Assembly: GCA_002269645.1 (NCBI GenBank)
Contig: NIVC01004460.1
Coordinates: 1 to 44,983 of the forward strand
Origin: Macrostomum lignano
Lineage: Eukaryota
Reading direction: 5' to 3'
Length of the DNA: 44,983 nt
A program made the translations under genes and the position numbers. The first letter of the stretch is position 1; each line of letters opens with the position of its first letter. A model generated the notes under the pieces. That model saw only the letters and a list, made by a program, of their open reading frames with translations. It had not been told where the DNA came from and did not search any database. This document shows, piece after piece, positions 571 through 44,652 of the stretch.

Positions 571-595
571 AGCTAGCTGACCCATGAAATCTCAC

Positions 596-2534: not shown

Positions 2535-3069
<535 letters not shown>

Positions 3070-3595
3070 ATGTCCGTCGATTTTTTTATTATGGCTTGAT
3101 GATTTAAGCAACTACTCGCAGATTGAGTAGTACAGCATTGTAGTTCGTAATTCGCCAAAAGAAATTTTATGGCTACGATTAATAAGTGGTTGATATTTTA
3201 TTTGAACAGCGTCTAAGTAGCAAAACTTGCCATTCAGCTCGACAAGTCTACAGTGCTATTCAATGAACAAAACAGAGGTGCACACGGAAGACGCATCTAT
3301 ACCAATAAAAATGAAAACCTTTTGTACAAAATACAAAAACCGCATTGTAGAAAGCTAGTTAAACAAGCAACTTCATCGAACAGTGAAAACAAAAGTACTG
3401 TAGACCGCCACAAACGACAGTACATTAGGCGTGCCAAACGGAATGAGAATACTGTGTACCAGGTACACACTTTCAACGAAAACGTTGGTTATTGGCTATA
3501 GGCTCCACTTTTTGTTACTTCGATACACGTTGCAGCTATGGATATGGTTTCCAGTTCTGAGAAACAGGAGCCGCCATGAAAAATTCAAGCTACGT

Positions 3596-3941
3596 GGGAC
3601 TCAAAATATACATGGGACTCAAACTACACGGGACTCAAGCCACTTGGGACTCAAGCCACTTCTGGCTCAAACCACTTGGGACTCAAACCACTTCTGGCTC
3701 AAACCACTTGGGACTCAAACCCCTTGGGACTCAAACTACACGGGACTCAAGCCACTTGGGACTCAAGCCACTTCTGGCTCAAACCACTTGGGACTCAAAC
3801 CACTTCTGGCTCAAACCACTTGGGACTCAAACCCCTTGGGACTCAAACTACACGGGACTCAAGCCACTTGGGACTCAAGCCACTTGGGACTCAAGCCACT
3901 TGGGACTCAAGCCACTTGGGACTCAAGCCACTTGGGACTCA
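3596..3941. repeat. 16-bp minisatellite with patterned variants (GGGACTCAAGCCACTT / CTGGCTCAAACCACTT / GGGACTCAAACTACAC)
   Basis: Direct reading; the variants recur in an ordered higher-order pattern. Confidence 0.95.
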
Positions 3942-4296
3942 AACAGGCTCAAATTCATCCAAGCCGTCGCTACCGGAGCTGCCGCCTGCGTCATTGACTG
4001 GCGCCACCAGCCAGTCGCCGAAATCGCCCTCCTCCTTGAAGCTGATCAACTTTCTTTGACTCTTGCCGCCGTTCCGAGCTGGATTTCTGCCGGCCAGATT
4101 CCGCCTGTGCACCGCGTAGGCGAGCACCAGGAGGCCGGCCGCCAGCGAGGAGGCAGCCAGAGCCGCGCTGGCCCGTCGACCGCGAATGGTGAAGCCGAGC
4201 CGGCTGCTTCTGGAAGCAGCGTCTGCCGGCAAGAGAGAATCGTTTGCTGCACCTCCAAGTGCGATCGATTCGTTTGAAGCTTCGCGTTTCTGCCGG
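3939..4296 (-). CDS. Probable terminal coding exon of a type I membrane protein (furin-like RQKR site, one TM helix, short tail ending EFEPV*)
   Basis: Acceptor ttttgcag| at 4299-4297. Frame reads RQKREASNES...SAALAASSLAAGLLVLAYAVHRR...DEFEPV* with strong GC3 codon bias. A phase-compatible 51-nt upstream exon exists at 4715-4665 (KLAQRRLGSKATSRHY); further weak candidates at 5579-5514 and 6058-5967. Confidence 0.5.
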
Positions 4297-4393
4297 CTGC
4301 AAAATGTTTTTCTTGTTTGCAACATTCTACTTTTAGTAGATGCTAAAGGTAATGCGTTATTAAAATTTATTGCTTATTCCGAGTACAACTAGA

Positions 4394-4655
4394 CCATTGT
4401 CTTCTCCTGACACCCATTGTCCCTCCTTCTGACATCCACTGTCTTTCCTCCTGACATCCATTGTTCTTCCTCCTGACATCCATTGTTCTTCCTCCTGACA
4501 TCCATTGTTCTTCCTCCTGACATCCATTGTCCCTCCTGACATCCAGTCCCTCCTCTTGACACCTCCTGACACCCTCTGTTTCCCCTCCTGACACCCACTG
4601 TTTCCTCTCCTGACACCCACTGTTTACCCTCCTGACACCCATTGTCTCCCCTACT
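4394..4655. repeat. ~22-bp minisatellite (TCCTCCTGACATCCATTGTTCT), degenerate at the ends
   Basis: Direct reading. Confidence 0.92.
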
Positions 4656-7194
4656 GACGCCCACCGGTAGTGCCTGGAAGTTGCTTTGCTCCCTAAACGC
4701 CTCTGCGCTAGCTTACTGTAAAATTAGGAAACCTCTGTCATACCAGTAGTTCAGACAGCTCTCCCAAGTCCAGATTAACCCTGGAAAATAATAGATTTAA
4801 CACTGGAGACTAGGGCAATATTCCCCTAGATAAGAAGTGAAGGCAGAGAGCTATCTTGACTACCTTAGGCATATATAAAGACAGCACCAGGCAAACGCAA
4901 ACAAACTGCTCAATAGGGGGAGGGGGGCAGCAAATCTGAATCAATCTAGGAAGCAATGTACCTGGTATAGACTCAGAGACCGGATGTTGGACCAGTCAAG
5001 TCATTCGCTCTATCCACGCTCAACAGCAGTGTACAGTAAAGACAGAGAATTGGCTGACTAACGCGTCAACTGAGTGGCTCGTTACTAAGAAAAATTGAAA
5101 CTAAAATATTCGATTCTATTTTTGTCATAGCGCAAACGGCGTATTAACGTTCTTGTTTCGAAAACATCGGAAATTCGAACAACTACTTACGGAATGGAAA
5201 AATCAGTAGTACAAATTAAATTTTTTAAAGAGTTGCATTACAAAAAATAAAACCTTACCTAATAATTTTTGCTGGGTCTTCCAGTGTATCGCGGCTTAGC
5301 TAAAATAAAAATATATTTTGTTTATTTGATCATTTGATTTTTTATTTAGTCAGGCCCTAATTTATTACAATAAACTTAAATAAGTTGTACAATGTTGGTT
5401 TTGGTGTTCCTGTTTTCGAAGCAAAGTAAAAAATAAGGAATAGCTAATAAAAACTTGTCGAAAAAATTTACTAGAGGCGTATGCACTTTACACAACATCT
5501 TAAACTATTTTACCTGCTGCATGTTGAGGTCGGTCGCCTTTAACATTGAGTTGCCGCAGACCAGCAGAGGGAACAAAAACTGCAGGTAAAGGTCCCTGAT
5601 AGCCATGCTTAAATTGTCGGGCCTAAAATGGTGTAAATTTACAAAATTAACAAAATAACACTATATTAATTAACTTCATATTAAATACGAATTGTAAGAA
5701 TTCAGCAACATCGGTTGCACTATTTTGACAAATAGCAAACAACCTCAGCCATTATAACAGCCAAAATTATTTGACTTATAGATTTTTATACTCGATAGAT
5801 TTTAAAGTTACTGATATCATTCATAGTCCTCGTCTATAGTGCACTATTATTCGAATGCAAAAATATTTTTTTACTGTGTTGTTGTAAAGCGTAATATTTT
5901 AGTTGAAATTCTCTGTAAAATTTTAGTGTAATAACTACAAAAGGGTAAAAAGCACACAACATATACCTTTGTTTTTGGTTGCGATACAAAAAACAAGTGT
6001 TTTTTTATAAATATAAGTTTTAATTAAAGGTCTGTCGCACAGTCGACCGAAGTAAGACCTAAGGAAGTATACCGGTATTGAGTTGAAAACTTGAATATCT
6101 AAAGTTACGAAATTAAAAATCCACTTGAATATTTATCGAGAAAATTTATAAAAGTAATTAGAAAACATAAATATTCTTGTTTGATATAGATAAATTAACT
6201 ACAAGAGTAGCCTGGTGATCGTTCTTTAAAGTATATTATTCAGTATATTTATCCAACTTTTGTTATGACGGATCTAATTTACGCGCGAATTATGCAAATT
6301 ATAATGCATATCACTTTGCAAGATTCCTGAAATTTCTGAAATGAAAGCAGAATTTTATCATTTTAATTTTTCCTTAACCTTTTTCGTTTATCATATGCAA
6401 AAGTCTTTGATAATTTAGTATTGCTAGTTTAATTGTGCTAGCATTGTGTTTAAAGTTTTAAAATATTTTTCTGTGCTGTTTATGACAATTTGTACGTAGA
6501 TGTCAAATACATGTACTACCAACTCTCCGAATTTTCCTCGATTTTCCTCGAGCTGTGAAATGACGAAAATGTGAGTTTCTTTTTCACTATCAAATTTGAA
6601 TCAATGTCAGAGTTGCGTTTTTTTAAATCAAGTCTGCAGTTAGACTTAGGCTTTTTTATACTTTAGCTGCTTTTGAAACTACATATCATGTACATGTACG
6701 AGCACATGTATAGCCTGCCAGGCCTATGCGGAGTCTACAAGCGTTTCTGACCTCGCGGACACCATTTAAGTTTGCAGCTATTGGACATATATATGCAAGC
6801 ACACACTACAGTATAAGTTTAACCAGTCATTATAATATATATACAGCCCACTCTTCCACAATAACATTAATTGCCACAAGCTCTCCTGCTATAGCAGTCA
6901 TTCAAGCCATTATTTATATTTTTTGCCGTACGATTTGCACGTGAGCATAGGAAAAAGGAAACTTAATTTTTGTCACCTCTCTAATCCCTGCAGCTAAGTA
7001 TAAGCTGTGCACTCTGGTCTGCTTTGAGCCGCATCCGCCCCCCACGCCTATAAGCACTGAGGTGAGCTGCTCACCCACTCCTCTAAGGCATCTGTGCCTA
7101 ACTTGCAGGTGCTACCTTAGTGCTGATCATGCGCTGACCCACCGGATTAGTGACGCTCTAAATCCCTTTTCAAGAGATTCCAGGATAAGAGCAC

Positions 7195-7839: not shown

Positions 7840-9077
7840 TCACACGGCAGTGGCTTGTGACACTCGAAGCTTGCCGTCACCTTCGCATCGGCGACTGGCA
7901 CCGATCAGCAGGCAGCTCAGCAGAATCAGAACCGCTGGCAGGCAGGCCAGGACGCTGATCACCGGCCAAGTGAGCCGCTCCAGCAGCTGAGCGGCCCGAG
8001 CGAGCCTGTGACCGCAGTAGAGCAGCGTCACGTAGCCAGCTAGCAGCAGCAACAGGCTGATGGCTTTCATCGTCAGGCCGGTGCACTGTCGAAGCCAGGA
8101 CGGCTGCTGGCCATGCCCGGCTGCCACCGCCGCTGCGGCTGCTTCCGGCCCCGCCGCCACTGCGTCCTCCGACGGATCTGACGGCGACGAAGTCGACCGT
8201 CGGGAACCGCCAGAGCCTCTTCTCTGCCGTGAAGCGGTCGCCAGCTCGCCGGCAGAATCTCCGGCCACTATGATCACTGTGGCCTCGGCCACGCCGCTTG
8301 CGCCGGCACCTCCAGCGAGACCGCGTCCGGCCCCGGGTCGACGGGCGCCACCATGATCGACGCCGTCTGGGGCAGCCTCGCCGACCTCGCGGCCCGGGGA
8401 ACCTCGGTCCACCTGCAGTGGGTGCCTGGCCACGCGGGAATCCCAGGCAACGAGGCCGTGGACGAGATCGCCAAGCAAGGCACCACGCTGGCGCAAGGCA
8501 CCGCGCCCGTACCGCTAGCTGCCGCGCAGGCTGCCGTCCGCCGCTACTGCCTCGCCCGCTGGCACCAGATCTACAACGCGGCGGCCACCGAGGCGGCGAG
8601 CACGAGCTCGCTTGCCTGGCACCTTGCCTGCACGGCGGGCCGCCTGCCGCCTCAGCCGACAAGCGACCTCACGCGGCGGCAGGAGCGGCTGATCTGCCAG
8701 CTGCGCGCCGACCGCTGCCCGGCCCTGCGGGGCTTCCAGGCCGCCATCGGCGTTGACGTGGCCCCACCTGCCGCCTCTGTGGCGATGGAGAGGAGACGGC
8801 GGCCCATCTGCTGATCTCCTGCCCCGCCCTGACATCACACCGCTGCCGCCTCTGGGGGCCAAGCCCGGAGCCCGCGGCAGTTTTCGAGAACTGCGTCGCG
8901 GTGTTGAACTTCCTCGGGAAGGCGGGCGCCATCTGACGCCCGGTGCCATGGGCCCTGGCCCGAGCACGCCCGAAGAAGAAGAAGAAGAAGACCGCTTCGA
9001 TAGCCTTCGTGCTGCTGCTGAGCAACTTCAGAACTGTAGTCAATTTTTTTCTGCTGCTGCCTTCCGTGCGATGTCAT
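7840..9077 (-). pseudogene. Single-exon gene for a ~190-aa protein with two C-terminal TM helices, disrupted by a LINE insertion in the coding sequence
   Basis: Removing the insert and one TSD copy joins MTSHGRQQQKKIDYSSEVAQQQHEGYRSG in frame to LAGGAGASGVAEATVIIV...MKAISLLLLLAGYVTLLYC...WPVISVLACLPAVLILLSCLLIG...ATAV*. Confidence 0.75.
8325..8988 (+). mobile_element. 5'-truncated non-LTR retrotransposon (RNase H-bearing, I/R1/Ingi-type) with (GAA)n tail and 7-bp TSD AGACCGC
   Basis: RNase H C-terminal motif VHLQWVPGHAGIPGNEAVDEIAK. After a 1-bp shift near 8761-8765 comes the CCHC finger CRLCGDGEETAAHLLISC, ending NFLGKAGAI*. About six GAA units at 8972-8990. AGACCGC occurs at 8318-8324 and 8989-8995. 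Confidence 0.9.
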
Positions 9078-9330
9078 TTGCGAGCGAAAGAAATTGGTTT
9101 TTTTCGAGCGCTGAATTCTCACAACGATTTTTAAGGCTGCTGCGATAAGGAAATATTGAGATAATTTTTTATGAATAATTCAAGAGGCTCTTGCCATAGA
9201 CAATACACGCTATTTATAGCCTGAGTCGCTCTATAAGAATATATTCCAGCCTCTTAAGGCTATCAACATGAACATCAATATCAAGGACGTCCGGCGGATT
9301 GATGCTCAAAAATAGATGCTTTGCATGTAC

Positions 9331-12443: not shown

Positions 12444-14723
12444 CACCATTTTACCCTCGCTTTTGAACAAACTCCGTTTCACTTTAGACAGTCGGAACTT
12501 CAGTTAAGACACTTTTAGACTGGAGCCCCGAATCTACATTCACTATCGACAAACTCCGTTTCAGTATCGACAGCTAAGCTTTGTGCTGCTACACTTCTAT
12601 CTATTTACATAGGCAAGTAAGGAAACGCACATCCAGATCTAGGCGAAACTCCCTTTCACTTTCGACAAACGCCACTTCTCCTTAAATAGTCTATGGTCTA
12701 AGCTGCTGAAACTCCGTTTCATTTTAGTCAACCAACATTCAAGATAGACAAGATACATTCACTTTAGACATGAACTCACACGGGAGGTGTGCAAAGGTTT
12801 ATTAAGCATGTTCATGGAAATTTCCAAGGATAAAAACTTTCATTGTAACGGAAGATGGCGTGCAACGAGAATTTTTTATCAATAAACAGTTAGTTTGGTG
12901 GCCTAATTTAAAAGGCATTTGAGAATGCAGGACTGTTCCGAAAAATGTTTGTTTAACAGCGTCGTGATTAAAACGGCAAAGCCAGCAGAAGCGAAACGAT
13001 AGTTCAGCGATGGGTTCTGATTTCCATTAGCCATCAATCGGCTGAGACGCCAAGCACCGTGGCAGATACCTGAAGCAATGGCTGAGCCACCGTGCCACCT
13101 TCTCTGGAGTGATGCAGTCTGCGGTGCCGTCCACCTCACGGAGTAGAATGTCTCGGCGGTACGCCGCCAGGCTGCGACCAGCAAGCTGCTGCTCGTCGGC
13201 CTGATGAAGGAATCTTGGATCGCCGACAGTCGACGCTTCAGAGCCGCCTTCCAGCATGATATCGCGTTCTCAACTGGGGTGAGAAATGGACTGTAGGGTG
13301 GCAGTCGTCTCACTTCCACAGCGTCTTCGACCTCGTAGCTTTCGGCGTCATTGTGGCTGCTGACGTTGTCTATGACAACACTGATGCTGCTGTCTGGAAA
13401 CACGCTGTGGAAGTTGGCGATTGTGATTGTGAGAAACTCGCCGAATCTCTCCTTTGTCATGCCGCTGTCGTATGACTGGAAGTGCACGATTCCAGCAGTT
13501 GGGCTTACTGCCAGGCAGACTGTGATGCGCTGTCCCTTCTGTCCAGAAACCTGTCGGTACACGCGCTGTCCACGAAGAGATCGTCCATAGGATCGCCGCA
13601 TCCATGTGTTGAAGCCAAACTCGTCAATAAAAATCTTCTCTGTGTCAGATGCTTCGGGCGAGCACATCCACTGAGCAAATTGCTCACGAGCGGCTACAAC
13701 CCTTGGCGAGTTGCGCTCAGCTGGAAGATCTCGTGCCAGCTTCGTTGTGAACAGTGCACCGTCGAGTTTTATGCTCAGTGTCTTTTCTGAGACATGCTGC
13801 TTCTCAGGAAAAGCTTGTCTGAGCATGGTGTTCATCTCTTTCAGAGTCAGCAATGGATTCTGCTCCACGATTGCGCACAAATATTCTTGCATCTCACCAT
13901 CCCACTTCACGTTCTTGGCTCCGCCGCACGAAAGCTTCTCCGCTCGTCCACTCCTCACAATGGAATATGCGGTCGTTCTCTTGATGCCAAGTTGAGAGGC
14001 CAGTAGGATAAAATCTTCGCCCTTCTGGTAAGTGGAGAGAAGTCGCTGCCTGTCCTGGTTGCTCACTGGCTGTCGCTGTTGCGCTGGAGCCTCCTCTTCA
14101 AAGTCGCTTTCACTTTCGTCTTCGTAACCAGGCTCCTCTTCTAGGTACGAATCTTCGCTGTCCTCCATCTTTTTCAGGGCTTGCTTTAGCGAATATTTTT
14201 AGCGAATAGGCTTCAGTGTTTGGAGCGAAGGGAGAGTAGGCTGAGACTTTGGTTCGGAAGTTCGGAAGGTCTGGCCGGCGACCCTGCCACCCCACACTGT
14301 TCAAAGGGGCGAAAAAGGTGTCTTAAAAGGTATCTATGGTCAAAACCCCTCTTTCAGCTAACACTTAGGCGTAAACAAATGACGCATCTAAGAATCTGTC
14401 TAAAGTGAATGTATCTTGTCTATCTTGAATGTTGGTTGACTAAAATGAAACGGAGTTTCAGCAGCTTAGACCATAGACTATTTAAGGAGAAGTGGCGTTT
14501 GTCGAAAGTGAAAGGGAGTTTCGCCTAGATCTGGATGTGCGTTTCCTTACTTGCCTATGTAAATAGATAGAAGTGTAGCAGCACAAAGCTTAGCTGTCGA
14601 TACTGAAACGGAGTTTGTCGATAGTGAATGTAGATTCGGGGCTCCAGTCTAAAAGTGTCTAAACTGAAGTTCCGACTGTCTAAAGTGAAACGGAGTTTGT
14701 TCAAAAGCGAGGGTAAAATGGTG
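12444..14723 (-). mobile_element. IS630/Tc1/mariner-superfamily DNA transposon, 2280 bp, 327-bp TIRs (12444-12770, 14397-14723), TA TSD
   Basis: TA|CACCATTTT...AAAATGGTG|TA. The TIRs are near-identical (one mismatch seen) and contain ~5 internal direct repeats close to AAACTCCGTTTCACTTTAGAC. Confidence 0.95.
13027..14168 (-). CDS. DDE transposase (~380 aa) with HTH N-terminus and DD32E triad; one 1-bp frameshift near 13190-13200
   Basis: IFIDEFGFN...ITVCLAVS...VVIDNVSSH...LPPYSPFLTPVE. The true C-terminus (...ITPEKVARWLSHCFRYLPRCLASQPIDG*) lies in the frame of ORF 13027..13257. Confidence 0.9.
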
Positions 14724-14909: not shown

Positions 14910-21307
<6,398 letters not shown>

Positions 21308-21744: not shown

Positions 21745-23118
21745 CACTACTTCACGGTGTATGTTTGAGTGACCCACCACTTCACGGTGTATGTTTGAGT
21801 GACCCAACACTTCACGGTGTATGTTTGAGTGACCCACCACTTCACGGTGTATGTTTGAGTGACCCAACACTTCAGGGGGTATGTTTGAGTGACCCAACAC
21901 TTCAGGGGGTATGTTTCAGTGACCCAACACTTCAGGGTGTGTTTGAGTGACCCACCACTTCACGGTGTATGTTTGAGTGACCCAACACTTCACCGTGTAT
22001 GTTTGAGTGACCCACCACTTCACGGTGTATGTTTGAGTGACCCAACACTTCAGGGTGTATGTTTCAGTGACCCAACAGTGTATGTTTGAGTGACCCAACA
22101 CTTCACGGTGTATGTTGGAGTGACCCAACACTTCAGGGTGTATGTTTGAGTGACCCACCACTTCAGGGGGTATGTTTCAGTGACCCAACACTTCAGGGTG
22201 TATGTTTGAGTGACCCAACCCTTCAGGGTGTATGTTTGAGTGACCCAACACTTCAGGGGGTATGTTTGAGTGACCCAACACTTTACGGTGTATGTTTGAG
22301 TGACCCAACCCTTCAGGGTGTATGTTTGAGTGACCCAACCCTTCAGGGTGTATGTTTCAGTGTCCCAACACTTCAGGGTGTATGTTTGAGTGACCCACCA
22401 CTTCACGGTGTATGTTTCAGTGACCCAACACTTCAGGGTGTATGTTTGAGTGACCCAACACTTCACGGTGTATGTTTCAGTGACCCAACACTTCAGGGGG
22501 TATGTTGGAGTGACCCAACACTTCAGAATGTATGTTTGAGTGACCCAACACTTCAGGGTGTATGTTTGAGTGACCCAACCCTTCAGGGTGTATTTTTGAG
22601 TGACCCAACACTTCAGGGGGTATGTTTGAGTGACCCAACACTTCAGGGGGTATGTTGGAGTGACCCAACACTTCAGAATGTATGTTTGAGTGACCCAACA
22701 CTTCAGGGTGTATGTTTGAGTGACCCAACCCTTCAGGGTGTATTTTTGAGTGACCCAACACTTCAGGGGGTATGTTTGAGTGACCCAACACTTCACGGTG
22801 TATGTTTCAGTGACCCAACCCTTCAGGGTGTATTTTTGAGTGACCCAACACTTCACGGTGTATGTTTCAGTGACCCAACCCTTCAGGGTGTATTTTTGAG
22901 TGACCCAACCCTTCAGGGTGTATGTTTCAGTGACCCAACAGTGTATGTTTGAGTGACCCAACACTTCACGGTGTATGTTGGAGTGACCCAACACTTCAGG
23001 GTGTATGTTTGAGTGACCCACCACTTCAGGGGGTATGTTTCAGTGACCCAACACTTCAGGGTGTATGTTTCAGTGACCCAACACTTCAGGGTGTATGTTT
23101 CAGTGACCCAACACTTCA
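21745..23118. repeat. 30-bp minisatellite, ~45 copies (GTGTATGTTTGAGTGACCCAACACTTCAGG)
   Basis: Direct reading; gives the 10-aa periodic ORFs. Confidence 0.97.
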
Positions 23119-23251
23119 GTTTGCGTGCTTGAGTAATCCAAAACCTCCCTGTGTGTCAGCACAGTGAACTGCTTATTACAGAAGTTTGTAGGAAGTCGCA
23201 CCCGAAAATAATTGATTCGACCCTACAAAACAGGCTTTGTTAAACTCCGCT

Positions 23252-23821
23252 TTACAAGAAATCGCGTCCCTGCTGGGCGGCGGCGCCTTTTGGACGACGC
23301 CCTTTATTGTTCTTCCGCTGCTCCCGCCGCCGCTGCCGGTGCACCCACGGCTCCACAGGTGGCACCGCACGGCCCCAGAGGCCGCGACCGCTGCGCTTTG
23401 CCTCGGCCTGCTCAGCGCGGTATTCCGGGCAGCAGCGGCCGCGGTAGCACCAGGCGAGGCCGCCGGCCACCAGCCATCGGTTGATGTCGCTGTTGCCATG
23501 GCAGACGAAGCCGAGCACGCGGCCGTAGCGGTCGAGCCCAGGCGAGACCACGCAGACGCGGCTGCCAACCGGGAGGCGCCGAACTAGCGCCGATAAGGCG
23601 TCGGCGCCGAACTCCTGGTCGAGCTCGGGCGCGTCGATCTGCGCCAGTCGAATCCGCGTCGTCGAGGTCGTCAGGTCGCCATCGGTCCGGACCCGCAGCG
23701 AGTCGGCGTCGTGGATGGAAGCGACGGAGCCGCAGAGGTACTTCTCTGTAGCGTGTGGGTTGTGTGCGCATGCTACTTGTTTGCGATGCTACTTACTTTG
23801 AGACAGTAGTATACAAAGCAT
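23252..23821 (-). CDS. Single-domain thermonuclease (staphylococcal-nuclease fold), 172 aa in model A; exons 23821-23797 and 23745-23252
   Basis: Frame extended by hand: [18 protein letters not shown]...[17 protein letters not shown]...[12 protein letters not shown]...[15 protein letters not shown]...[17 protein letters not shown]...PVEPWVHR. This matches the SNase motifs DGDT, R-x4-DAPE, DKYGR, GLA and GLW. The 51-nt intron gtaagt...ctacag is phase 1 on both sides. Confidence 0.9.
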
Positions 23822-23844
23822 ATTTTATAATCAATAGCCACTGA

Positions 23845-24180
<336 letters not shown>

Positions 24181-24628
24181 AAACTAAGAAAGACTGACAC
24201 TGAGACAAAATGAAGACATCCCGAGTTTGTTGCGAGCTGTCTGCGATTCGCATGCAGCTAAAAGTTATTGCATACCCGGTCATCACAGCTACAAATTGCC
24301 AAGACTTTTGCTACTCAGCGGAGAAGCCAGCTAGCTCAAGGGCCGGTAATGTCGCACAGTATCGTTGAATCAAAATCGGTAGCTTCATCAATGTAGAAGA
24401 CTTTTTGAACACGCACACCACACTGAATTTATTTTGGGGCAGAAGTCCTTCAAAGACGTCGAAGGTTGGAACCAGGGAACATAAAGGTTACAGCTCGTTC
24501 TGTAGCAAAGCCACACTTGCACGGTCAACGAGGTTTCGTGTTGCACAAGTTTATGACTGACTAGCGCAGGTGGTGAAACATGAGACTGATGACTCGGTGA
24601 CTCAAAGTGTGTGGGGGACTATTAGTCT

Positions 24629-24700
24629 GGGTAGCCAGTCTAGTGGTCTGGCGCGGCACTCTGATGTGCCAGCGGCCCAGGCTCGATTCTCAAATGCAGT
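24629..24700 (+). mobile_element. Possible degenerate tRNA-derived SINE head
   Basis: A-box-like CAGTCTAGTGG and B-box-like GGCTCGATTC at tRNA-like spacing. No cloverleaf, tail or TSD confirmed. Confidence 0.3.
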
Positions 24701-25254
24701 CGTCACTTTACTTTGGGGCTAAATTAGAATCTCGGCTTGGCTCTGCTCGTGTAATTAACGGCCTTGAGGGCCAACACCCAGGGCACAGTGAGGGCCGCTG
24801 TACACTCTTGTGTGAGTGTGTGCCTGTGCGTATGACTGCGTACGTATCCGCGCGCTTGTGTGCCTCGTTAAACCAATCGCAAGAAAGAGTGGCCATAGAC
24901 ATTTAAACTGCCATCAAGCTCTGACGATAGCTAGAGAAGGGAAATGTTGCCAATTGCTTGAATCTAATAAGCTAGATGGACGGACAGCAGTCTTACACAA
25001 TGGGATTAACGCGAGTATTGCAACACGGAAATTAAACAACATTTCGGCTTCTCAGAAACAGCGGGAGCACTAATAAAATACAGCCTAGAAATGCTGAAAT
25101 CCTATTTTCCCAATACGACTAAAAGAAAAACAAGATGAAAGGCCAAGTCATGTGCACGAAACGCACTCAGGTCGGTACTTGAACTAGCAGCGTCTCTGTT
25201 CCGGGATCTGGGTAGCTTTAGCTGTTTTTGTTAGGGGAAAATGCCTCCATTCCA

Positions 25255-25820
25255 AATGCCTCATCTCTCTGTGCCTCATCTCTCTGTGCCTCATCTCCCA
25301 ATGCCTCATCTCCCTGTGCCTCATCTCCCTGTGCCTCATTTCCCAATGCCTCATCTCCCAATGCCTCATCTCCCAATGCCTCATCTCCCAATGCCTCATC
25401 TCCCAATGCCTCATCTCCCAATGCCTCATCTCCCAATGCCTCATCTCCCAATGCCTCATCTCCCAATGCCTCATCTCCCAATGCCTCATCTCCCAATGCC
25501 TCATCTCCCAATGCCTCATCTCCCAATGCCTCATCTCCCAATGCCTCATCTCCCAATGCCTCATCTCCCAATGCCTCATCTCCCAATGCCTCATCTCCCA
25601 ATGCCTCATCTCCCAATGCCTCATCTCCCAATGCCTCATCTCCCAATGCCTCATCTCCCAATGCCTCATCTCCCAATGCCTCATCTCCCAATGCCTCATC
25701 TCCCAATGCCTCATCTCCCAATGCCTCATCTCCCAATGCCTCATCTCCCAATGCCTCATCTCCCAATGCCTCATCTCCCAATGCCTCATCTCCCAATGCC
25801 TCATTTCCCAATGCCTCATC
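25255..25820. repeat. 15-bp minisatellite (CCCAATGCCTCATCT), ~37 copies, highly homogeneous
   Basis: Direct reading; gives the WEMRH / PNASS ORFs. Confidence 0.98.
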
Positions 25821-25849
25821 TGCTGTAAACCATTCCGAATTGGACTCAC

Positions 25850-26025
25850 CTGCCGTGGCGCAATCAACAGCCGATTTTGCTTTTTTTCCGGGTGATTTTT
25901 TTTCGCCCCGAAGATTTGCACAGCTCGACTTCGGTTGCCAATAGCAACAGCAGCAGCAGCAGCGGCCGCAGCTGGACTGCTGAGCCGAAATAGTTCAGAC
26001 GCCGCTGGAATGAAAATAGCATCAT
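25850..26025 (-). CDS. Candidate upstream exon of the thermonuclease gene encoding a signal-peptide-like segment (model B; needs a 1-nt correction in an A-run)
   Basis: MMLFSFQRRLNYFGSAVQLRPLLLLLLLLATEVELCKSSGRKK... with a strong donor CAG|gtgagt at 25850. As assembled the frame stops; removing one A from the A8 or A7 run gives ...KKAKSAVDCATA plus a phase-1 G that joins the 23745 exon in frame. Confidence 0.4.
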
Positions 26026-26346: not shown

Positions 26347-26932
<586 letters not shown>

Positions 26933-27362: not shown

Positions 27363-28417
27363 TCAACCCACAACTCCCACATTGCTCTTGGTCGGCCTAG
27401 CCGGGCCGCTGGAGTTGCGGCCCCTGCTGGTGCATCCGCTGCCCAACACCTGAACTTTCCGCCTGAACTCGGCGTTGAGCGTCAGCTGAAGCAGCGGCTT
27501 CACCGAACAGCTGCACAGGGCCAGCCAGACCATGAAGTTGTGCAGCGCAATCGGTTGTCGTTCAGTGATAAATCGTATGAAAGTCACGTGACAGAAGTAG
27601 GGCAGCCAGAGCAGGTTGAACAGCACGTAGTTGAGCATCACTGAGCTCAGCGAGCGGATCAGCTTGCGCTGCTCAGCAATCTGCCTGGCCCCGGCGACAA
27701 GGTCCTGGATACGCCTGCGCGAGGCCACGACGTGGGCGAGTACGCGACCGTAGCAGAAGCCGGCCACAGCGGACGGTGTGGTCACCATGAGCAACATGAC
27801 GGCTAGCGCGAGCGCCATGTTACTTTCGCCGTCGTCGCCAAAGAAGCACAAATAACTGTCCGGCACGTACTTGAATGCGCGCTGCGAGAAGACAACACCG
27901 CTTAGCGCTAGCCAGAGAGTCCAGTTGGCGATCAGGCGGATGATCACGTGACCTGCTCCCTCCAGGCAGCGATGGTAGGCAGCCTGGTGCAGGACGAATG
28001 CGTATCGATTGAGTCCAATCAGAGCGAAGCTGGAATTGGCCACGCCGACGCAGACGAAGAGGGCGCAGCCGCTGGCCAGACAGACATCGTCGCCGAGCAG
28101 CCTGGAGCCGGCGAAGCGCTGGCGAACACCAGCGGCAGGATGAGGACGCAAACCAGCAGGTCGCAGACGGCGATGTTGCCAACGCAGGCGTTGATGCCGT
28201 TCTGCAGCGTCTTGAACCTGGCCAACAGGATCAAGATTGTGACGTTGCCAGTCGTCCCGATGCCAGCCAGTAAGACGAGGAACACGAGCGCGCTGATGCG
28301 CCATCCGGGACTGTTTAGCAGTTGCCATCCGGGATCGACAGCAACGGTCGTGTCAAGCGGCGTCGCAAAGCTGTCATTCGGGCTGCCGGGATCCGGAGTC
28401 GACGATGGATGCGACAT
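27363..28417 (-). CDS. Intronless rhodopsin-class GPCR, melatonin-receptor-like; one 1-bp frameshift near 28113-28117
   Basis: N-glycosylation site NDS; TM1 GN (GTTGNVTILILL); TM2 NIAVCDL; TM3 LIGLNRYAFVLH (NRY in place of DRY); ECL2 YLCFF; TM6 LLWLPYF; TM7/H8 LNAEFRR. ORFs 28019..28465 and 27363..28328 each hold part of the protein. Confidence 0.88.
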
Positions 28418-29198
28418 GCCCGGCTCTCTAAAGCTGCCTTCAGACAGTTTTTCAGGCAAAGTCAAGCTCGATCAGGCTTGCAAATCCTCGGATGTATATA
28501 AGATTTTATCCGAATTCAGGCGGCCAATGGGATTTAGGCGCTGCAGCCGGGGGAGGCCTACAGTCCCTTCTCCTAATCCCGTAGTTGTTGGGGAGAAAAA
28601 ACTGACCAAAACAAGATTTTCCAAAAAAATTATTCGAGCGTCAAATTTCAAACGGAGATTCAAAGTGATTTGAAGATTGCTTGCTTTAAGATGCTACCCC
28701 AGATAGACTCAGGTGGAAATCGCCTACGTACTGACTTGAGCCCTGCGTCCCTGATTAGCTTATTGAGAAGGATTCCGTCCGGGATATTTGAATCATCCGA
28801 CCATGAAGAACAGCTCGCTTCACATTTGATACGCTATAAGGCAAATAACCTATAGCAAGGTAACCAAATAAAATTTCCTATCGGGATTAAGTAAACTGGA
28901 ATCAGTCATACATACTAATGGGGATGGGGGCATATTTGGAATCTATCTCATTAGCGGACAGGGAGTAAGCTTTTTATCCTTGACCCGTTTTTTGTAGCAA
29001 TGATTTGCTGAGGAAACAATTAGCTCTGTTGAATGTCGAAAATAAAGTCGAAAATTTGTCCAAGAAGAAAAACATAGATTGTCAGCAGCCACAGAACTGC
29101 ACTCAATCATAGACCGTAGAGTCAAATCAAGCTGATAAAAGTTAATTTGTTTTTTTTAACTTGGTGCAAATTTTAATTACCAATGGGATGATTCTTAC

Positions 29199-39689: not shown

Positions 39690-42600
39690 GGCTGGTGGGA
39701 TATCTGCACCCTCTATTTGCCTCTGGCAGCCGCAGACCCGCCACGATGTCTCGCAAGTCGACCCAGGGGTACACGTCCCCGCGAGTGTTCTGAATGTAGG
39801 GCTGCTGGACAGACTGGGCTCCGGCGCTGACGACCCATCCAGTGGCTTCGGCCGAACTTGGGTGTGCGGGTCTGGTTCGCCAGCCTGCAGGCCGTGGTAC
39901 TGCGCTTAACGTACCCTCTAATGCCTAAGGTGTTGACCGTGCCGATGGGCTGGAAGGCCGGGGAGTAATCCGGTCGCTAGCGGTCCCGTTTTTCAAACCG
40001 GCTGGCTTGGGGTGTCGGCCAGTCGGGTACTCAACTCGCGTAACGAGTAGCCCTCCCCCGCTTTTCAGCTATGGCCACTAACGCCACCACCACCAACGAA
40101 ACTGACCCGGTCGCCACGGCCCACCGGGATCAGCCGCTCCGGCAGCTACCGCTGGTAGCTCCAACGCCCAACCTGGTCCAACCGGGCCAGCTGACGCTGC
40201 CGCCGAGCACCCTGGCCGCCAGTCAAGCCGACCGCCCACGGCCGAGGCCCGACGCCAGCGCAACATCCGCCGCAACCTTAAGCGGCAGGAGAAGCGGACT
40301 GCTGTTGCGTCCGCGGAGGACGGGCAAGCCGCGGTGAGGCCTTCGGTAGCCACCGCGATGGGGAAGCCCTCTGGAGAGTCTGGTGGCGCGGCTGGACGTC
40401 AGGAACTGCCGTATCCTCGGACTCTCAGGGGGGCAACCCTGCCAGCCTACCGCCTTCCAAGGACAAAGTGGCCCCCCATAAGACCTCGGAGACCTATGCC
40501 TCCAAAGTCAAGCAGACGCTTCAACCCGCCGTGATGATCCTCGGCGGGGACTGCGACCTTACTCCCGAGCAGCTCGACGTCGTCGCGTGGCGCACTATCG
40601 ACGAGAGCCTGTTTAACTTAACCCTGGAGGGTGTCTTTGTGGACATCGTCAAGTGCATCCTCCTGTGGTGCAAATCCGAGGAGAGCACCCAGCTCCTGCG
40701 GGATCAGCTGCCCATGTTCGACTGGCCCATTGACCTGGGCCAGCTGACCTTCGCCCTGGAGAGCGAGCGGCCGAAGACCATCCGCCATCGGATTTGGGTC
40801 CCGGCCGACAGCGCGATCAAGTCCGGGGAGCAGCTGCAGCAGCTCCTGCTCAAGCGGCACCCGGATCTCGACGTCAGTGGTCTTGTGTACCACAACACTC
40901 TCATTCTCGGCCTGACGGCGGCTACCGCACGGCTCGAACCTCCACCTTGGTCTCCATCAGTGACCATCCTCCGCTGTGAGGAGGGCAATACGGAGGCCAA
41001 GAACGACGGGAAGCGCGCCGCACCCGGAGCTGGGGCTCAGGCTCCGCCGGCCAAGCGTCAGCAGCAACCCGATCCCGAGCCTAACAAGGCTATTCGCGCT
41101 GCTGAGTCCACCTCGCGCGGACGTGGACCCGCCCGCAGTAGCAGGCGGTCCGGGCTAGTTCAGCGCGCACTTGGTGAAGCTCAGGCTCAGCCATCCAACT
41201 GGTGGGACTGCCACAAGGAGGACGCTGCCGGCCGAGTTCAGACTCCCGACGGCGGGGCGTACGGCGAAGGCAGCAGCCGTACCTCAGTTGCTGGGGAGGG
41301 AAGCCGTGCAGCGCGGCCAGGTGACTCACCTTCCATGGGCGCCGCGTCCACCTCCGTGGCCGGGGAGGCGGCTGAGCCTGAGCCAATGGAAATTGGCGAC
41401 TTAACTCTCACCGAGGAGGCTGAGAATGAGTTGCTTTTCTCCTCCCCTGGACAGTAGCCATGAAAGTCTCCCAGGGCACTCACTGCTTGCAGGTCAACCT
41501 GCAGCACAGCATTGCTTCTTCAGTCAACCTCATGAAGCCCACTGAACAATACGCACCAGGGATTATCCTTATCCAGGAACCTTGGACGCTAAGGGGCAGG
41601 CCCCAACATGTCCCCACCGGCTACCAGTGTTTAACCGCTGGCACAGATACTATATAACTAGATAGGTCACTCGGACTCGCTCACTGCTGCCTTCGAAATA
41701 TCATGCCTACTAAAGGCATATAAAGGCAAACAGTCGGCCCCATGGTGGAACCCGCAGCTTGGCGACCTCCGTTGCAAAGCCAAAGGCTGCACCGTAGGGC
41801 CCAAAAAACTAAAAAAACCGGCTGACTAAACCGCCTACCTGAACTCTATCCACGAGTTCAAGAGGCCGGTTAGGAACGCCAAAACAAAACCAATAAGTGG
41901 CGCGAATACTGTGAGGAACTTGAGGGCTCCCGCCCCACCTCCAGAATCGTTAAAGCCCTCACTCTGGACAAAATGTCCAAACTTTCCTCAGTAAAGAGAG
42001 CCGACGGCTCGCTCACTGAGAACCCAGGAGAAACGCTGGAGGCGATGCTAACAGCCTTTTTACCGCACGAGCCAGCCAGGCCGGACCCCCTGATCATTCA
42101 GTGGGCGGACACGTACTGGCTGACTCAATCATTACGGGGGACCGCGTTACTAAAGCAGTCTCCTCCTTCAAACCCTTCAAATCGCCAGGACCGGACGGCG
42201 TTGTGCCAGCCTTCCTGCGAGAGGCGGTGAAATGCACCGGTTTCCTGTGGAACCTTTGCCGGCTCCTGAAAGCTTGCATTTTACTCGGCTTTGTTCCAAA
42301 ACCCTGGACCGAGGTGAAGGTGGTTTTTATCCCCAAGCCCGGCCGACCGGACTACCGGTCCATTAAATCCTTCAGACCAATCAGCCTCACCTCCTCACTC
42401 GTGAAGCTGTTGGAGAGACTAGTGCTTTGGCGCCTCCTCTCTGTAGAACTGAAGAACAAGCCACTCAGTGAGAACCAGCACACCTTTAGGGCAGGCAGGT
42501 CCATGGAGAGCGCGCTACACGTCTTGGTTGACATGCTGGAGAAAGCCGTTTTGGTAATGGCTACGCTCTCGCTGTCTTCCTCGACATTGTTGGAGCCTTC

Positions 42601-44652
42601 GATAATTTCCTCTTTGAGGCTTTCGACAGAGCTCTACGTGCTAGAGGAACCCACTCGCACCTCACCCGGTGGATCATGTATATGATCAGCCACTGTACTG
42701 CCACCGCACACCTGCTGGGCCACCAACGGAGGTAACCATCTGCAAAGGCAGCCCCCAGGGCGGTGTTCTCTCTCCACTTCTCTGGAACATGGTCATCGAT
42801 GATATCCTTCAGGACAGCCTTCTTGACCCCATTCTTAAGGTCGGTTACGCCGATGATGTTACAGCCGTAGCATCCGGACCGTCACCCGAAACCTTTAGGG
42901 ATCTTCTGCAAAACTTTATTCGCTCTGCCGAACAATGGGCGGACAGGTGCGGCCTCAGGCTCTCCGAGACCAAAACTGTCGCAATCTTGTTCACCAGCAG
43001 GATCAACTGGCGTATTTGCCCACTAAAGCTTTACGGGGTGGAAATCCCATCCTGCAAGCAAACCGAGAGTCTCGGCGTTACGCTGGACCACCGGCTGAGC
43101 TGGTCCACCCACGTCCAGGCCAAAACCAAAAAGCCCTCGCGATTCTTGCGCAGCTGCGCAGAGCCGTCGGCACCACCTGGGGCCTCACCCCGAAGCGGCT
43201 CTGGTGGATCTATACCGCAATGGTCCGACTAGCCGTTACTTACGCCGGCCTGGTCTGGACCAGCGCCTTGCAGATTAAAACCTGCCACAAAGCCCTCAAA
43301 AAGGTGCAGGGACGCGCGTGCCGCATGATTCTGAATGCCCCGCTCTTTGCTCCCTTTGACGGCCTCAACGCTTTTCTGCTCTCGCCTCGCCCCTGGACAT
43401 CTTCGTCCGTCGCGAGGCTGCTAAAACCACCCGCCGGCTCATCGAGGCTGGCGTTAGCTTCAAGCCACAAAGAGCGATGGCAAAGCGCAAGCTCCTGTAG
43501 CACTCTGACCTGTGCCTTAAGTTCTGGAGGAGAGTGGGAGTGCGGCTGTCCTTTCGGACACTGAGCCGCGCTCCCTCAACCTCTACCAACGCTTCAAGGT
43601 CACTATCCCCTCCAGGGAGAACGCCAACGACAGCTGGGCCCCTCAGGAGGTTCACTGCTTCACTGACGGATCCTCCAAAGACGGCTTATCCGGCTTTGGA
43701 GTCTGCATCCTTATCAACGGCTGCGTGATCGCCACTCATGCCCAACATACTGGCAGACTCTCTAGCGTCTTCCAGAACGAAGTCCTTGCCATCAGCTCCT
43801 GCGCAGCTGAGCTCTACTGCAGGGACTTCAAAGACAGAAGAATCTTCTTCCACTCTGACAGCCAGGCCGCTTTGCAGGCCCTGTGTCACACCACTACGAA
43901 CTCCCGAACAGTCCGCAACTGTATCGGGCAGCACAACAAGCTGGCTCGTAGGAACACCATCCGGCTTACGTGGATCCCAGGACACGCCGGCTTCAAAGGT
44001 AACGAGCTCGCCGACTCCCTCGCCAAGGTGGGTTGTTCTGGCTCGCTCCTTGGCCCCGCGCCCCTGGTCCCCATCTCCGCCACGGTCATTAATCGTCAGA
44101 TTAACGACTGGGCGGACATCCTGCACTTGCGCAGATGGGATGGTATCTCCAACTGCCGCCAATCCCGTGCGGCAGTGCCCAATCCGTCCCTCAAGATGGG
44201 GAGAATCATTCTGAATCAAAATCGAAAAGATATCCGCGCTCTCACTATGACCTTCACAGGTCACGGTTGCTTTTCCAGGCATTGTTTCCTCCGAAGTGTT
44301 CACCGGAGCGAACTCTGCCCTTTCTGCAACCTCGAGAACGAAGACGCCAAGCACTTCGTCTGCTACTGTCTGGCCTTCAACCGAGACCGGCTCAACCACC
44401 TCGGGCCCAACCCGTCCCTGGACGACGCTTGCCGGCCGAGAACATCCACGGCTTATCCGGTTCCTCCGGGCCACCAAGCGAGGCTATAGCCTCCGTCTTC
44501 CCCACCGAAGACAACGCTGCAGACAGGACAGGCAGACCTCCCTGACCGGCCCCGCGCCCTAGCCTATGCCGGTCTTTCAGGGATTAGCGTAATGAGCGAC
44601 GATTGCCTCAGCACTGCGTCTTCGGACCGCCCAGCAGCTAAGTCAAGTAAGT
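39690..44652 (+). mobile_element. Decayed near-full-length non-LTR retrotransposon, R1/LOA-type with RNase H (5'UTR, ORF1, ORF2, 3'UTR)
   Basis: ORF1 ~40071-41457. ORF2 from 41460: APE start LQVNLQHS...ILIQEPW; PWWN; RT motifs FKSPGPDGV, FRPISLTS, QHTFRAGRS, GSPQGGVLSPLLWN, GYADD; RNase H motifs FTDGS, EVLAI, HSDSQAAL, WIPGHAGFKGNELAD; CCHC finger CPFC..EDAKHFVCYC. Many frameshifts; the 3' end is near AAGTCAAGTAAGT. Confidence 0.92.

What the first reader, a model, noticed from the sequence alone, without database searches (positions are those of the whole stretch)
23252..23821. Bacterial-type single-domain thermonuclease with a spliceosomal intron in an animal genome: candidate domesticated horizontal gene transfer
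Seen: an intact 164-codon exon, only half-reported by the ORF track, encodes one complete SNase-fold domain. It retains equivalents of staphylococcal nuclease D21 (HDADS), R35/D40/E43 ([11 protein letters not shown]) and D83/Y85/R87 (DRYGR), plus GLAW, GLW and the PxxPWxxR tail. It is joined through a canonical 51-nt GTAAGT...CTACAG intron, has GC-rich third positions like the neighbouring host exons, and sits among host-type satellites. Established: animals typically carry this fold only in multi-domain Tudor-SN/SND1; stand-alone forms are known from bacteria, phage and plasmids, fungi (Lcl3) and plants (CaN). Inference: a horizontally acquired, intronised and probably active Ca2+-dependent nuclease that may be undescribed in this lineage.
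Basis: partly seen in the sequence, partly recalled or inferred. Interest (0 to 1): 0.88.

Follow-up and report, generated by a model that had tools for sequence, protein, structure and literature searches.

The report
Bacterial-type secreted nuclease gene in flatworm

Summary
The window is contig NIVC01004460.1 of the flatworm Macrostomum lignano. The 164-codon minus-strand exon (23745..23252) is real. It encodes a complete SNase domain with all catalytic residues (Pfam E 3.7e-15; model matches S. aureus nuclease, TM 0.76).

GenBank's RNA-seq-derived models join the same acceptor to an exon 2.1 kb upstream (26004..25850), which encodes a signal-peptide-like leader.

The gene is already deposited as a "hypothetical protein" (PAA47422.1). 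It has two near-identical syntenic copies. I also found two diverged paralogue families in the same genome (50% and 46% identity). All three share a phase-1 intron at the homologous codon and five cysteines.

Outside M. lignano, every close relative is prokaryotic: chromosomal or conjugative-plasmid thermonucleases at 31-47% identity. Human SND1 repeats score about seven times lower.

Horizontal transfer before the family expanded is the best reading. Tree support is weak, and other flatworm genomes could not be searched.

The window's own copy has an extra A in exon 1 (A7 against A6). This is either a frameshift or an assembly error.

Best guess at function: a secreted Ca2+-dependent nuclease.

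The parts
23252..23745 (-). Exon 2 of gene BOX15_Mlig013652g3 (PAA47422.1). It encodes the whole mature SNase domain plus a basic C-terminal tail; stop TAA at 23254-23252.
   Evidence: It is 100% identical over 631 nt to the copy on NIVC01002300.1. It differs at 5 sites (4 synonymous, 1 not) from the copy on NIVC01000025.1.
23746..25849 (-). Phase-1 spliceosomal intron, 2104 nt, GTGAGT...CTACAG. It contains a 15-nt satellite (25240-25821) and (ACAG)n (23845-24181).
   Evidence: The deposited protein reads VDCATA-E-KYLCG across the junction. Sequence; repeats. The donor and acceptor match the M. lignano consensus GT[G/A]AG and CAG (PMC8629364).
25850..26004 (-). Exon 1: arginine-rich N-terminus, L8 hydrophobic core and basic linker (RRLNYFGSAVQLRPLLLLLLLLATEVELCKSSGRKKITRKK...), i.e. 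a signal-peptide-like leader.
   Evidence: tblastn of the paralogues' N-termini; sequence; three-copy alignment; hydropathy peak of 3.6 at residues 15-24; helix 6-24 in the model.
25881..25887 (-). A7 homopolymer. It is A6 in the L002 copy and AAACAA in the L001 copy. In the window it shifts the frame to KKSKIGC*, which is why the deposited CDS starts only at 25868.
   Evidence: Whether this is a real mutation or an assembly error is undecided.
26005..26010 (-). TTCCAG acceptor immediately 5' of exon 1. It fits the M. lignano spliced-leader trans-splice acceptor motif [T/C]TNCAG.
   Evidence: motif and SL sequence from PMC8629364. The deposited CDS of the L001 copy begins at the first base after this AG. 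The SL's terminal ATG would be in frame. This is inference; no SL reads were seen.
26020..26025 (-). Two in-frame genomic ATG codons, 15-21 nt upstream of exon 1 and just after a TAA at 26034-26032. They offer an alternative start if the transcript is not trans-spliced. They are conserved in all three copies.
   Evidence: Read directly.
23797..23821 (-). It lies inside the real intron. No deposited model uses it, and its product would lack a signal peptide.
23519..23710 (-). Codons of the catalytic and Ca2+-binding residues (numbering of P0001):
- D64 23710-08
- D66 23704-02 (= S. aureus D21)
- R84 23650-48 (R35)
- D89 23635-33 (D40)
- E92 23626-24 (E43)
- D123 23533-31 (D83)
- Y125 23527-25 (Y85)
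- R127 23521-19 (R87)
   Evidence: Alignments; coordinates read.
27363..28420 (-). Upstream same-strand host gene, a rhodopsin-family GPCR. Its stop lies 1.36 kb from exon 1, and 585 nt of that gap is (GGCA)n. This may be an operon-like arrangement.
   Evidence: Pfam 7tm_1 E 1.2e-16. Operon criterion from PMC8629364. This is inference.

Best explanation
The exon is the main coding exon of a transcribed two-exon gene of Macrostomum lignano (Mlig013652.g3).

Exon 1 supplies a eukaryotic signal-peptide-like leader. A phase-1 GT-AG intron of 2.1 kb follows. Exon 2 encodes a complete staphylococcal-nuclease-fold domain that begins about where bacterial homologues have their signal-peptide cleavage site.

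The gene belongs to a worm-specific family with at least three diverged subfamilies and about ten annotated gene copies. The family most likely descends from one bacterial thermonuclease gene of the YncB / 'micrococcal nuclease' type, which is common on conjugative plasmids. The transfer happened before the family diversified. The gene then gained its leader exon, its intron and five conserved cysteines.

The product most likely works as S. aureus nuclease does (inferred):
- Ca2+ is held by the two aspartates (D66, D89).
- E92 activates water.
- R84 and R127 stabilise the transition state.
- DNA and RNA are cut to 3'-phosphate products outside the cell. The location is probably the gut lumen or another secretion, for digesting nucleic acids of prey and biofilm.

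The start codon is either the AUG at the 3' end of the spliced leader or a genomic ATG 15-21 nt upstream. Both are in frame.

The window's own copy may be disabled by a +1 A in exon 1.
For: Identity and host:
- The window is NIVC01004460.1, with the deposited CDS at 23252..25868 on the minus strand.

Fold and active site:
- Pfam SNase E 3.7e-15.
- AlphaFold2 model, pLDDT 87.
- Foldseek best match is S. aureus nuclease, TM 0.76, probability 1.0.
- All catalytic residues are kept in subfamilies A, B and C.

Gene model:
-.

Transcription:
- The GenBank annotation of NIVC01 was built only from RNA-seq-based, genome-guided transcripts cut at trans-splice and poly(A) sites (PMC5730564).

Host locus:
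- There are three collinear copies at 94-100% identity. They sit with a GPCR, a Tc1-like transposase and a conserved 551-aa neighbour gene.

Selection:
- Window against L001, exon 2: pS 0.031, pN 0.0028, ratio 0.09, Fisher p 0.018. The unique part of the intron differs by 1.9%.

Family:
- Subfamily B (Mlig022653): 146 bits, 50% identity.
- Subfamily C (Mlig018861/002410): 127 bits, 46% identity.
- These are the best hits among 1.84 billion representatives.
- All three subfamilies have a phase-1 GTGAGT...AG intron in the fifth codon after a conserved [D/N]C.
- Five cysteines are conserved, against 0-3 in bacterial relatives.

Bacterial affinity:
- Every non-Macrostomum hit that could be identified is prokaryotic.
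- More than 5000 plasmid records, 4108 of them conjugative, carry a homologue at up to 42% identity.
- phmmer bit scores: bacteria 58-87, S. aureus NucA 14, human SND1 SN1-4 1-12.5. The SND1 sequence was verified against PDB entries 4QMG and 3BDL.
Against: - Neighbour-joining trees do not resolve a donor. They give only 17-24% bootstrap for monophyly of the worm family and 75% for separating it, together with the bacterial family, from NucA and SND1.
- Plant CAN and fungal LCL3 stand-alone SNases were not in the trees.
- Identity to bacteria (31-47%) is hardly lower than identity between the worm subfamilies (44-50%). The family is therefore old, and an ancient eukaryotic origin with losses is not excluded.
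- Other flatworm genomes and transcriptomes could not be searched.
- No RNA-seq reads, SL reads or expression site were seen directly.
- The gene identifiers appear in no paper or held supplement that I searched.
- The signal peptide is judged from hydropathy only.
- In the window copy, the A7 run would stop translation before the nuclease domain, and exon 2 contains no Met.
Confidence: 0.7

Rival explanations
1. Vertical inheritance. An ancient eukaryotic or metazoan stand-alone SNase gene was kept and expanded in macrostomid flatworms and lost or diverged beyond recognition elsewhere. No transfer from bacteria took place.
For: The family is old within the genome: subfamilies are only 44-50% identical and share an intron. 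Stand-alone SNases exist in plants and fungi (PMC3505149 listed; own knowledge for LCL3). The trees are unresolved.
Against: No eukaryotic protein other than M. lignano's own appears among the best 120 or 150 hits of three searches of collections that include NCBI nr and UniRef. All identifiable neighbours are prokaryotic. The C-terminal P..PW..R tail and the domain boundaries match the bacterial family column for column.
Confidence: 0.12
2. The window's copy is a pseudogene. The extra A in exon 1 is real, so this particular locus makes no nuclease, while its sister copies do.
For: A7 in the window against A6 or AAACAA in the two sister copies. The deposited CDS is 5'-partial and starts after the shift. 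Another family member, Mlig022653g1, is also truncated. The genome is a redundant neopolyploid (PMC5730564).
Against: Homopolymer indels are typical errors of long-read assemblies (own knowledge). Exon 2 is 100% identical to the intact L002 copy, with no further damage.
Confidence: 0.35
3. One reading: translation starts at ATG 23821 and a 51-nt intron (23796-23746) is removed.
For: ATG, GTAAGT and CAG are present, the join is in frame and removes an in-frame stop. The stretch is identical in all three copies. It would rescue the window copy from the exon 1 frameshift.
Against: None of the deposited RNA-seq-derived models uses it; all join the distal exon. Subfamilies B and C also use a distal leader exon at the homologous phase-1 site. 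The product would begin MLCILLSQK, without a signal peptide. The conservation says nothing, because all 115 nt upstream of exon 2 are identical.
Confidence: 0.06
4. Bacterial contamination or a chimeric assembly join.
For: High GC3 (0.835) relative to neighbouring exons.
Against: The exon sits between worm satellites inside a spliced gene, in three collinear contigs and in an independent earlier assembly (UniProt A0A1I8GL13). Its neighbours are a GPCR and transposons. Exon 1 and the intron are shared with paralogue families elsewhere in the genome.
Confidence: 0.01

Closest known systems
Bacterial thermonuclease family proteins of the YncB / 'micrococcal nuclease' type (Pfam PF00565), chromosomal and on conjugative plasmids
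   Same: Single SNase domain of about 130 residues. Same invariant residues (D.D, R.RL..IDAPE, DRYGR, G.AW.Y, GLW, P..PW..R), a basic C-terminal tail and an N-terminal export signal. 31-47% identity and 58-99 bits.
   Different: Encoded in an animal genome and split by a spliceosomal intron. The leader is on a separate exon. It has five to six cysteines where most bacterial members have none. No Excalibur domain. It is present as an expanded paralogue family.
Staphylococcus aureus nuclease A (Nuc, micrococcal nuclease)
   Same: Same fold (Foldseek TM 0.76). Equivalents of D21, R35, D40, E43, D83, Y85 and R87 are kept. Secreted enzyme.
   Different: Only about 23-25% identity (14-30 bits). It lacks the loop at residues 44-50 and has K84R. 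The tail carries P..PW..R, which Nuc lacks.
Tudor-SN / SND1, the usual animal carrier of SNase folds
   Same: SNase-like OB-fold (Foldseek hit to 4QMG).
   Different: SND1 has four tandem SN repeats plus a Tudor-SN5 module and has lost most catalytic residues (own knowledge). The worm protein is a single catalytic-type domain and scores only 1-12.5 bits against the four human repeats.
Plant CAN1/CAN2 and fungal LCL3 stand-alone SNases
   Same: Eukaryotic single-domain, Ca2+-dependent SNase-type nucleases (PMC3505149; own knowledge).
   Different: They are membrane-anchored rather than carrying a cleavable-looking leader. None appeared among the best hits of any search.

Membership tests
SNase / thermonuclease superfamily (PF00565) | Full-length match to the SNase domain model above the curated threshold | tested here: met
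   56.7 bits against a cut-off of 21, profile positions 1-105 of 107.
SNase / thermonuclease superfamily (PF00565) | OB-fold barrel plus three helices | tested here: met
   AlphaFold2 pLDDT 87. Foldseek to S. aureus nuclease structures, probability 1.0, TM 0.76.
SNase / thermonuclease superfamily (PF00565) | Ca2+ ligands (D21, D40) and catalytic R35, E43, R87 | tested here: met
   D66, D89, R84, E92 and R127 align with them. They are also kept in subfamilies B and C.
SNase / thermonuclease superfamily (PF00565) | Ca2+-dependent hydrolysis of DNA and RNA | not testable with these tools
   Needs recombinant enzyme.
Bacterial YncB-like / plasmid thermonuclease family | Closest sequence relatives, and shared C-terminal P..PW..R motif | tested here: met
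Bacterial YncB-like / plasmid thermonuclease family | Prokaryotic gene organisation (uninterrupted ORF in a dense bacterial context) | tested here: not met
   The gene is interrupted by a 2.1-kb GT-AG intron and has animal neighbours. It is a eukaryotic derivative, not a bacterial gene.
Tudor-SN / SND1 | Four tandem SN repeats plus a Tudor domain | tested here: not met
   One SNase stretch only and no Tudor domain. 1-12.5 bits to the human SN1-SN4 repeats.
Horizontally acquired animal gene (usual criteria) | Physically linked to bona fide host genes, not contamination | tested here: met
   Three syntenic contigs, GPCR, Tc1-like transposase and a conserved neighbour gene.
Horizontally acquired animal gene (usual criteria) | Host-type gene structure (spliceosomal intron, host splice consensus) | tested here: met
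   GTGAGT...CAG phase-1 intron shared by three subfamilies. Consensus from PMC8629364.
Horizontally acquired animal gene (usual criteria) | Nearest relatives in the donor domain; no comparably similar gene in other animals | tested here: met
   Only M. lignano and then prokaryotes. Caveat: unannotated flatworm genomes are not in these collections.
Horizontally acquired animal gene (usual criteria) | Supported phylogenetic nesting within a donor clade | tested here: inconclusive
   NJ bootstraps: 17 for any sister, 17-24 for worm monophyly, 75 for separation from the outgroups.
Horizontally acquired animal gene (usual criteria) | Transcribed and spliced | tested here: inconclusive
   Indirect only. 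The deposited models derive from an RNA-seq-guided transcriptome. No reads were inspected.
SL trans-spliced genes of M. lignano | [quoted passage not shown] | tested here: inconclusive
   TTCCAG is present, and the L001 model starts exactly after it. A chimeric model with an upstream GPCR donor also exists.
SL trans-spliced genes of M. lignano | Reads carrying the 35-nt spliced leader at that site | not testable with these tools
   No read data available.

The most novel reading that the evidence does not exclude
A thermonuclease ('nuc') gene from a broad-host-range conjugative plasmid entered the macrostomid germ line. It gained a leader exon, a phase-1 intron and disulfide cysteines. It then expanded into the first described family of stand-alone, secreted, catalytically active SNases in an animal. 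The worm uses them for extracellular digestion of prey or biofilm nucleic acids, or as an antimicrobial or reproductive secretion. In subfamily A, the initiator AUG is donated by the spliced leader itself.
Probability: 0.25. Interest if true: 0.65.

Novelty: new member of a known kind. Interest (0 to 1): 0.5.

Why it matters
Well-supported bacterium-to-animal gene transfers that became expressed, intron-bearing and expanded gene families are still few. I found none described for Macrostomum lignano or other flatworms.

M. lignano has transgenesis, RNAi and in situ methods. The steps by which a bacterial secreted enzyme is fitted with a eukaryotic leader exon, an intron and disulfides could therefore be tested directly, as could what a worm does with a micrococcal-type nuclease.

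Practically, the finding also corrects a gene model. It flags a chimeric 1918-aa UniProt entry and a possible frameshift in the reference contig.

Tried and rejected
1. I asked whether the apparent peptide similarity between the end of exon 1 and the sequence just upstream of exon 2 (tblastn) marks an intron made by duplication. At the DNA level the best local alignment is reached by 55 of 500 shuffles, so it is chance.
2. I looked for a donor lineage with neighbour-joining trees of 63-113 domains. They were unresolved, and no maximum-likelihood program was available.
3. I looked for expression or localisation data. The gene identifiers Mlig013652, 008456, 022653, 018861 and 002410 occur in no searchable paper. 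They also do not occur in the held supplements of PMC5816591, PMC12732829, PMC7336406 and PMC12896417.
4. I looked for earlier descriptions: Macrostomum plus HGT, thermonuclease plus Macrostomum, thermonuclease plus HGT plus metazoa, and Platyhelminthes plus HGT plus nuclease. Nothing relevant turned up.
5. NCBIfam gave only a weak partial hit to EcnA (29.8 bits against a cut-off of 180). PHROGs gave generic endonuclease families. Phage genomes hold only three weak homologues, so a phage vector is not favoured.
6. Base composition as evidence of foreignness is not decisive. GC3 is 0.835 for subfamily A but 0.64-0.71 for B and C, 0.52-0.70 for neighbouring host exons and 0.65-0.83 for bacterial homologues.
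7. The first word-indexed search missed the 46-50% identical worm paralogues. They appeared only in the exhaustive HMMER search.

Full report
**1. What is in the sequence**

On the minus strand an open frame runs from a CTACAG acceptor (23751-23746) to TAA at 23254-23252. The mechanical ORF list shows only its last 99 codons, because the frame has no ATG, GTG or TTG before 23551.

- The 163-residue product matches Pfam SNase (PF00565) end to end: E 3.7e-15, 56.7 bits against a threshold of 21.
- It aligns with S. aureus nuclease structures.
- An AlphaFold2 model built on 24 homologues has mean pLDDT 87. Its best structural matches are S. aureus nuclease crystal structures, with probability 1.0 and TM 0.76.
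They fall on the invariant columns of the bacterial family and on S. aureus D21, R35, D40, E43, D83, Y85 and R87.

The observation of an intact, catalytically plausible SNase exon is therefore confirmed.

**2. Whose genome**

The best database hit is 99% identical: 'hypothetical protein BOX15_Mlig008456g1, partial [Macrostomum lignano]'. Two members of its cluster, PAA47422.1 and PAA47420.1, sit on a contig of exactly 44,983 bp.

The window is NIVC01004460.1 of assembly GCA_002269645.1, in the same coordinates. The deposited CDS lies at 23252..25868 on the minus strand. Other features of the window:

- a rhodopsin-type GPCR;
- a Tc1-like DDE_3 transposase;
- reverse-transcriptase and RNase H fragments;
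- large satellites.

**3. The gene model**

They read ...SAVDCATAE-KYLCGS....

- tblastn places the upstream part at 26004..25850. The sequence there shows TTCCAG|CGGCGT... at the 5' side and ...ACGGCAG|GTGAGT at the 3' side.
- The real intron is 25849..23746 (2104 nt, phase 1). It contains the 15-nt satellite and the (ACAG)n array.
They are formally in frame, but no deposited model uses them.
- These models come from a genome-guided RNA-seq transcriptome whose transcript ends were cut at experimentally mapped trans-splice and poly(A) sites (PMC5730564).

Exon 1 encodes RRLNYFGSAVQLRPLLLLLLLLATEVELCKSSGRKKITRKK.... This has basic residues, an eight-leucine core (hydropathy 3.6; helix in the model) and a polar, basic linker. 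It looks like a signal peptide, but no dedicated predictor was available.

**4. The start codon**

Exon 1 has no ATG.

- The deposited CDS of the sister copy on NIVC01000025.1 begins at the first base after the TTCCAG acceptor.
- That hexamer fits the M. lignano trans-splice acceptor motif [T/C]TNCAG.
- The 35-nt spliced leader ends in ...TTGCATG (PMC8629364). That ATG would be in frame with CGG CGT CTG.
- Alternatively, two genomic ATGs at 26025-26020, just after a TAA at 26034-26032, are also in frame and are conserved in all three copies.

Which start is used is an inference that needs SL-containing reads.

**5. Copies and selection**

Two further copies lie on a 608-kb and a 185-kb contig. 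The loci are collinear with the window over more than 13 kb at 94-98% identity. They share the GPCR, the satellites and a 551-aa neighbour gene.

- Exon 2 is identical to the 185-kb copy over 631 nt. It differs from the 608-kb copy at five sites, four of them synonymous.
- This gives pS 0.031, pN 0.0028, a ratio of 0.09 and Fisher p 0.018. The unique part of the intron differs by 1.9%.
- That is modest evidence for purifying selection on the nuclease domain.

In exon 1 the window has A7 (25887-25881) where the others have A6 or AAACAA. The shift gives KKSKIGC-stop, and this explains why the window's deposited CDS is 5'-partial and starts at 25868. Exon 2 contains no methionine, so a real A7 would silence this copy. 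It could equally be a homopolymer error of the long-read assembly.

**6. A family, not a single gene**

The exhaustive HMMER search of 1.84 billion representatives found 14,379 homologues. The best after self are two more M. lignano groups:

- Mlig022653 g1-g4 (200-203 aa, 50% identity, 146 bits);
- Mlig018861/Mlig002410 (183 aa, 46% identity, 127 bits).

UniProt names them 'TNase-like domain-containing protein'. Both have their own ATG and a hydrophobic leader. Both are two-exon genes.

In all three groups the single intron is phase 1. It starts with GTGAGT and lies in the fifth codon after a conserved [D/N]C:

- A: GCA G|gt...ag|AG
- B: GAT C|gt...ag|CC
- C: ATT A|gt...ag|GA

Five cysteines and all catalytic residues are shared. 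Most bacterial relatives have no cysteine in the domain. The leader exon and the intron therefore predate the split of the family. One member, Mlig022653g1, is truncated.

**7. Relatives outside the worm**

- In the first search, every hit after self was an unnamed metagenomic protein or one named 'endonuclease YncB (thermonuclease family)' or 'micrococcal nuclease', at 35-44% identity.
- A scan of one genome per prokaryotic species found 462 relatives. The best were Acidovorax (45%), Competibacteraceae, Alcaligenaceae, Planctomycetes and others.
- Contigs of unnamed top hits have prokaryotic gene density and content: a RES-Xre toxin-antitoxin pair, overlapping genes and a lipobox.
- A profile of the three worm subfamilies, searched against 5.8 billion proteins, again returned only M. 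lignano and then prokaryotic proteins. No other animal or eukaryote was among the best 120.
- More than 5000 plasmid records, 4108 of them conjugative, carry a homologue of up to 42% identity. Only three phage records do.
- Against the worm protein, bacterial members score 58-87 bits, S. aureus NucA 14 bits, and the four SN repeats of human SND1 1-12.5 bits. I checked the SND1 sequence against PDB entries 4QMG and 3BDL.

**8. Limits of the transfer inference**

- Neighbour-joining trees place the worm proteins inside the bacterial family, but with no supported sister (bootstrap 17).
- Support for worm monophyly is weak (17-24%), and A+B get 56%. Separation from NucA and SND1 gets 75%.
- The domain is short, and no maximum-likelihood tool was at hand.
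- Plant CAN and fungal LCL3 could not be included.
- Unannotated flatworm genomes such as M. cliftonense and M. hystrix (PMC10468722) are not in the protein collections. 'Absent from other animals' therefore holds only for annotated proteomes.
- Base composition is not informative.

I rate bacterial origin at about 0.75-0.8 and vertical descent with massive loss at about 0.1.

**9. Function**

- Shown: fold, active-site residues, leader-like exon, and signs of constraint.
- Inferred: a secreted Ca2+-dependent endo-exonuclease acting like S. aureus nuclease, used outside the cell.
- A digestive or anti-biofilm role in the gut of this diatom-feeding worm is my best guess. No expression data could be found.

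**10. Novelty**

The gene is already deposited, but as a hypothetical protein. No paper I could search mentions it, the family, or HGT in this worm.

HGT-derived secreted enzymes in invertebrates are a known kind, and this would be a new member. It is moderately interesting (0.5), not 0.88.

Noticed in passing
window 595-28420, minus strand: UniProt A0A1I8GL13 (1918 aa, 'G_PROTEIN_RECEP_F1_2 domain-containing protein') is a chimeric read-through model. It strings together the GPCR, the SNase gene, a Tc1-like transposase, gene Mlig031327 and exons at 595-5621 from one end of this contig to the other.
   Followed up: partly
window 26347-26931: A perfect (GGCA)146 microsatellite (100% matches) fills much of the 1.36-kb gap between the GPCR stop (27363) and SNase exon 1. 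The repeat-adjusted distance of about 0.77 kb is under the 1-kb operon criterion used for M. lignano (PMC8629364).
   Followed up: partly
window 25240-25821; L001 10183-11619: The 15-nt intronic satellite (AATGCCTCATCTCCC, 38.8 copies, 97% matches) is about 2.5 times longer in the paralogous locus on NIVC01000025.1. The intron length therefore differs between copies mainly through this array.
   Followed up: no
window 21749-23119: A 30-nt satellite (46 copies, 90% matches) starts about 130 nt after the SNase stop codon. It produces long spurious ORFs on both strands.
   Followed up: no
window 12903-14168, minus strand: An uninterrupted 421-codon ORF with DDE_3 (E 1.2e-18) and HTH_32 domains. 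This looks like an intact Tc1/mariner-type transposase.
   Followed up: no
window 42101-44489, plus strand: Fragmented reverse-transcriptase (RVT_1) and RNase H ORFs in different frames. This is a decayed retroelement at the GC-rich end of the contig.
   Followed up: no
window 14910-21307, plus strand: An annotated 551-aa gene without any Pfam hit lies convergent to the SNase gene. It sits in the same position beside all three subfamily-A copies (L001, L002 and the window).
   Followed up: no
window 7843-9128, minus strand: Gene Mlig031327g2 (PAA47420.1, 205 aa, GC 0.69 in its main exon) has no Pfam match. It has a hydrophobic C-terminal half. It was placed in the same 90% cluster as the SNase proteins only through the chimeric UniProt entry.
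   Followed up: no
L001 about 13990-14005 (3' UTR of the Mlig008456g1 copy): A 15-nt insertion (GCGGGAAAGTTTATT) relative to the window and L002, about 20 nt after the stop codon.
   Followed up: no
P0160 = PAA66989.1 (Mlig022653g1), contig of 69,795 bp: A subfamily-B copy whose product starts inside the domain (MQIDAPE...) and leaves the frame after ...VAGLG. It is probably a decaying or mis-modelled copy.
   Followed up: no
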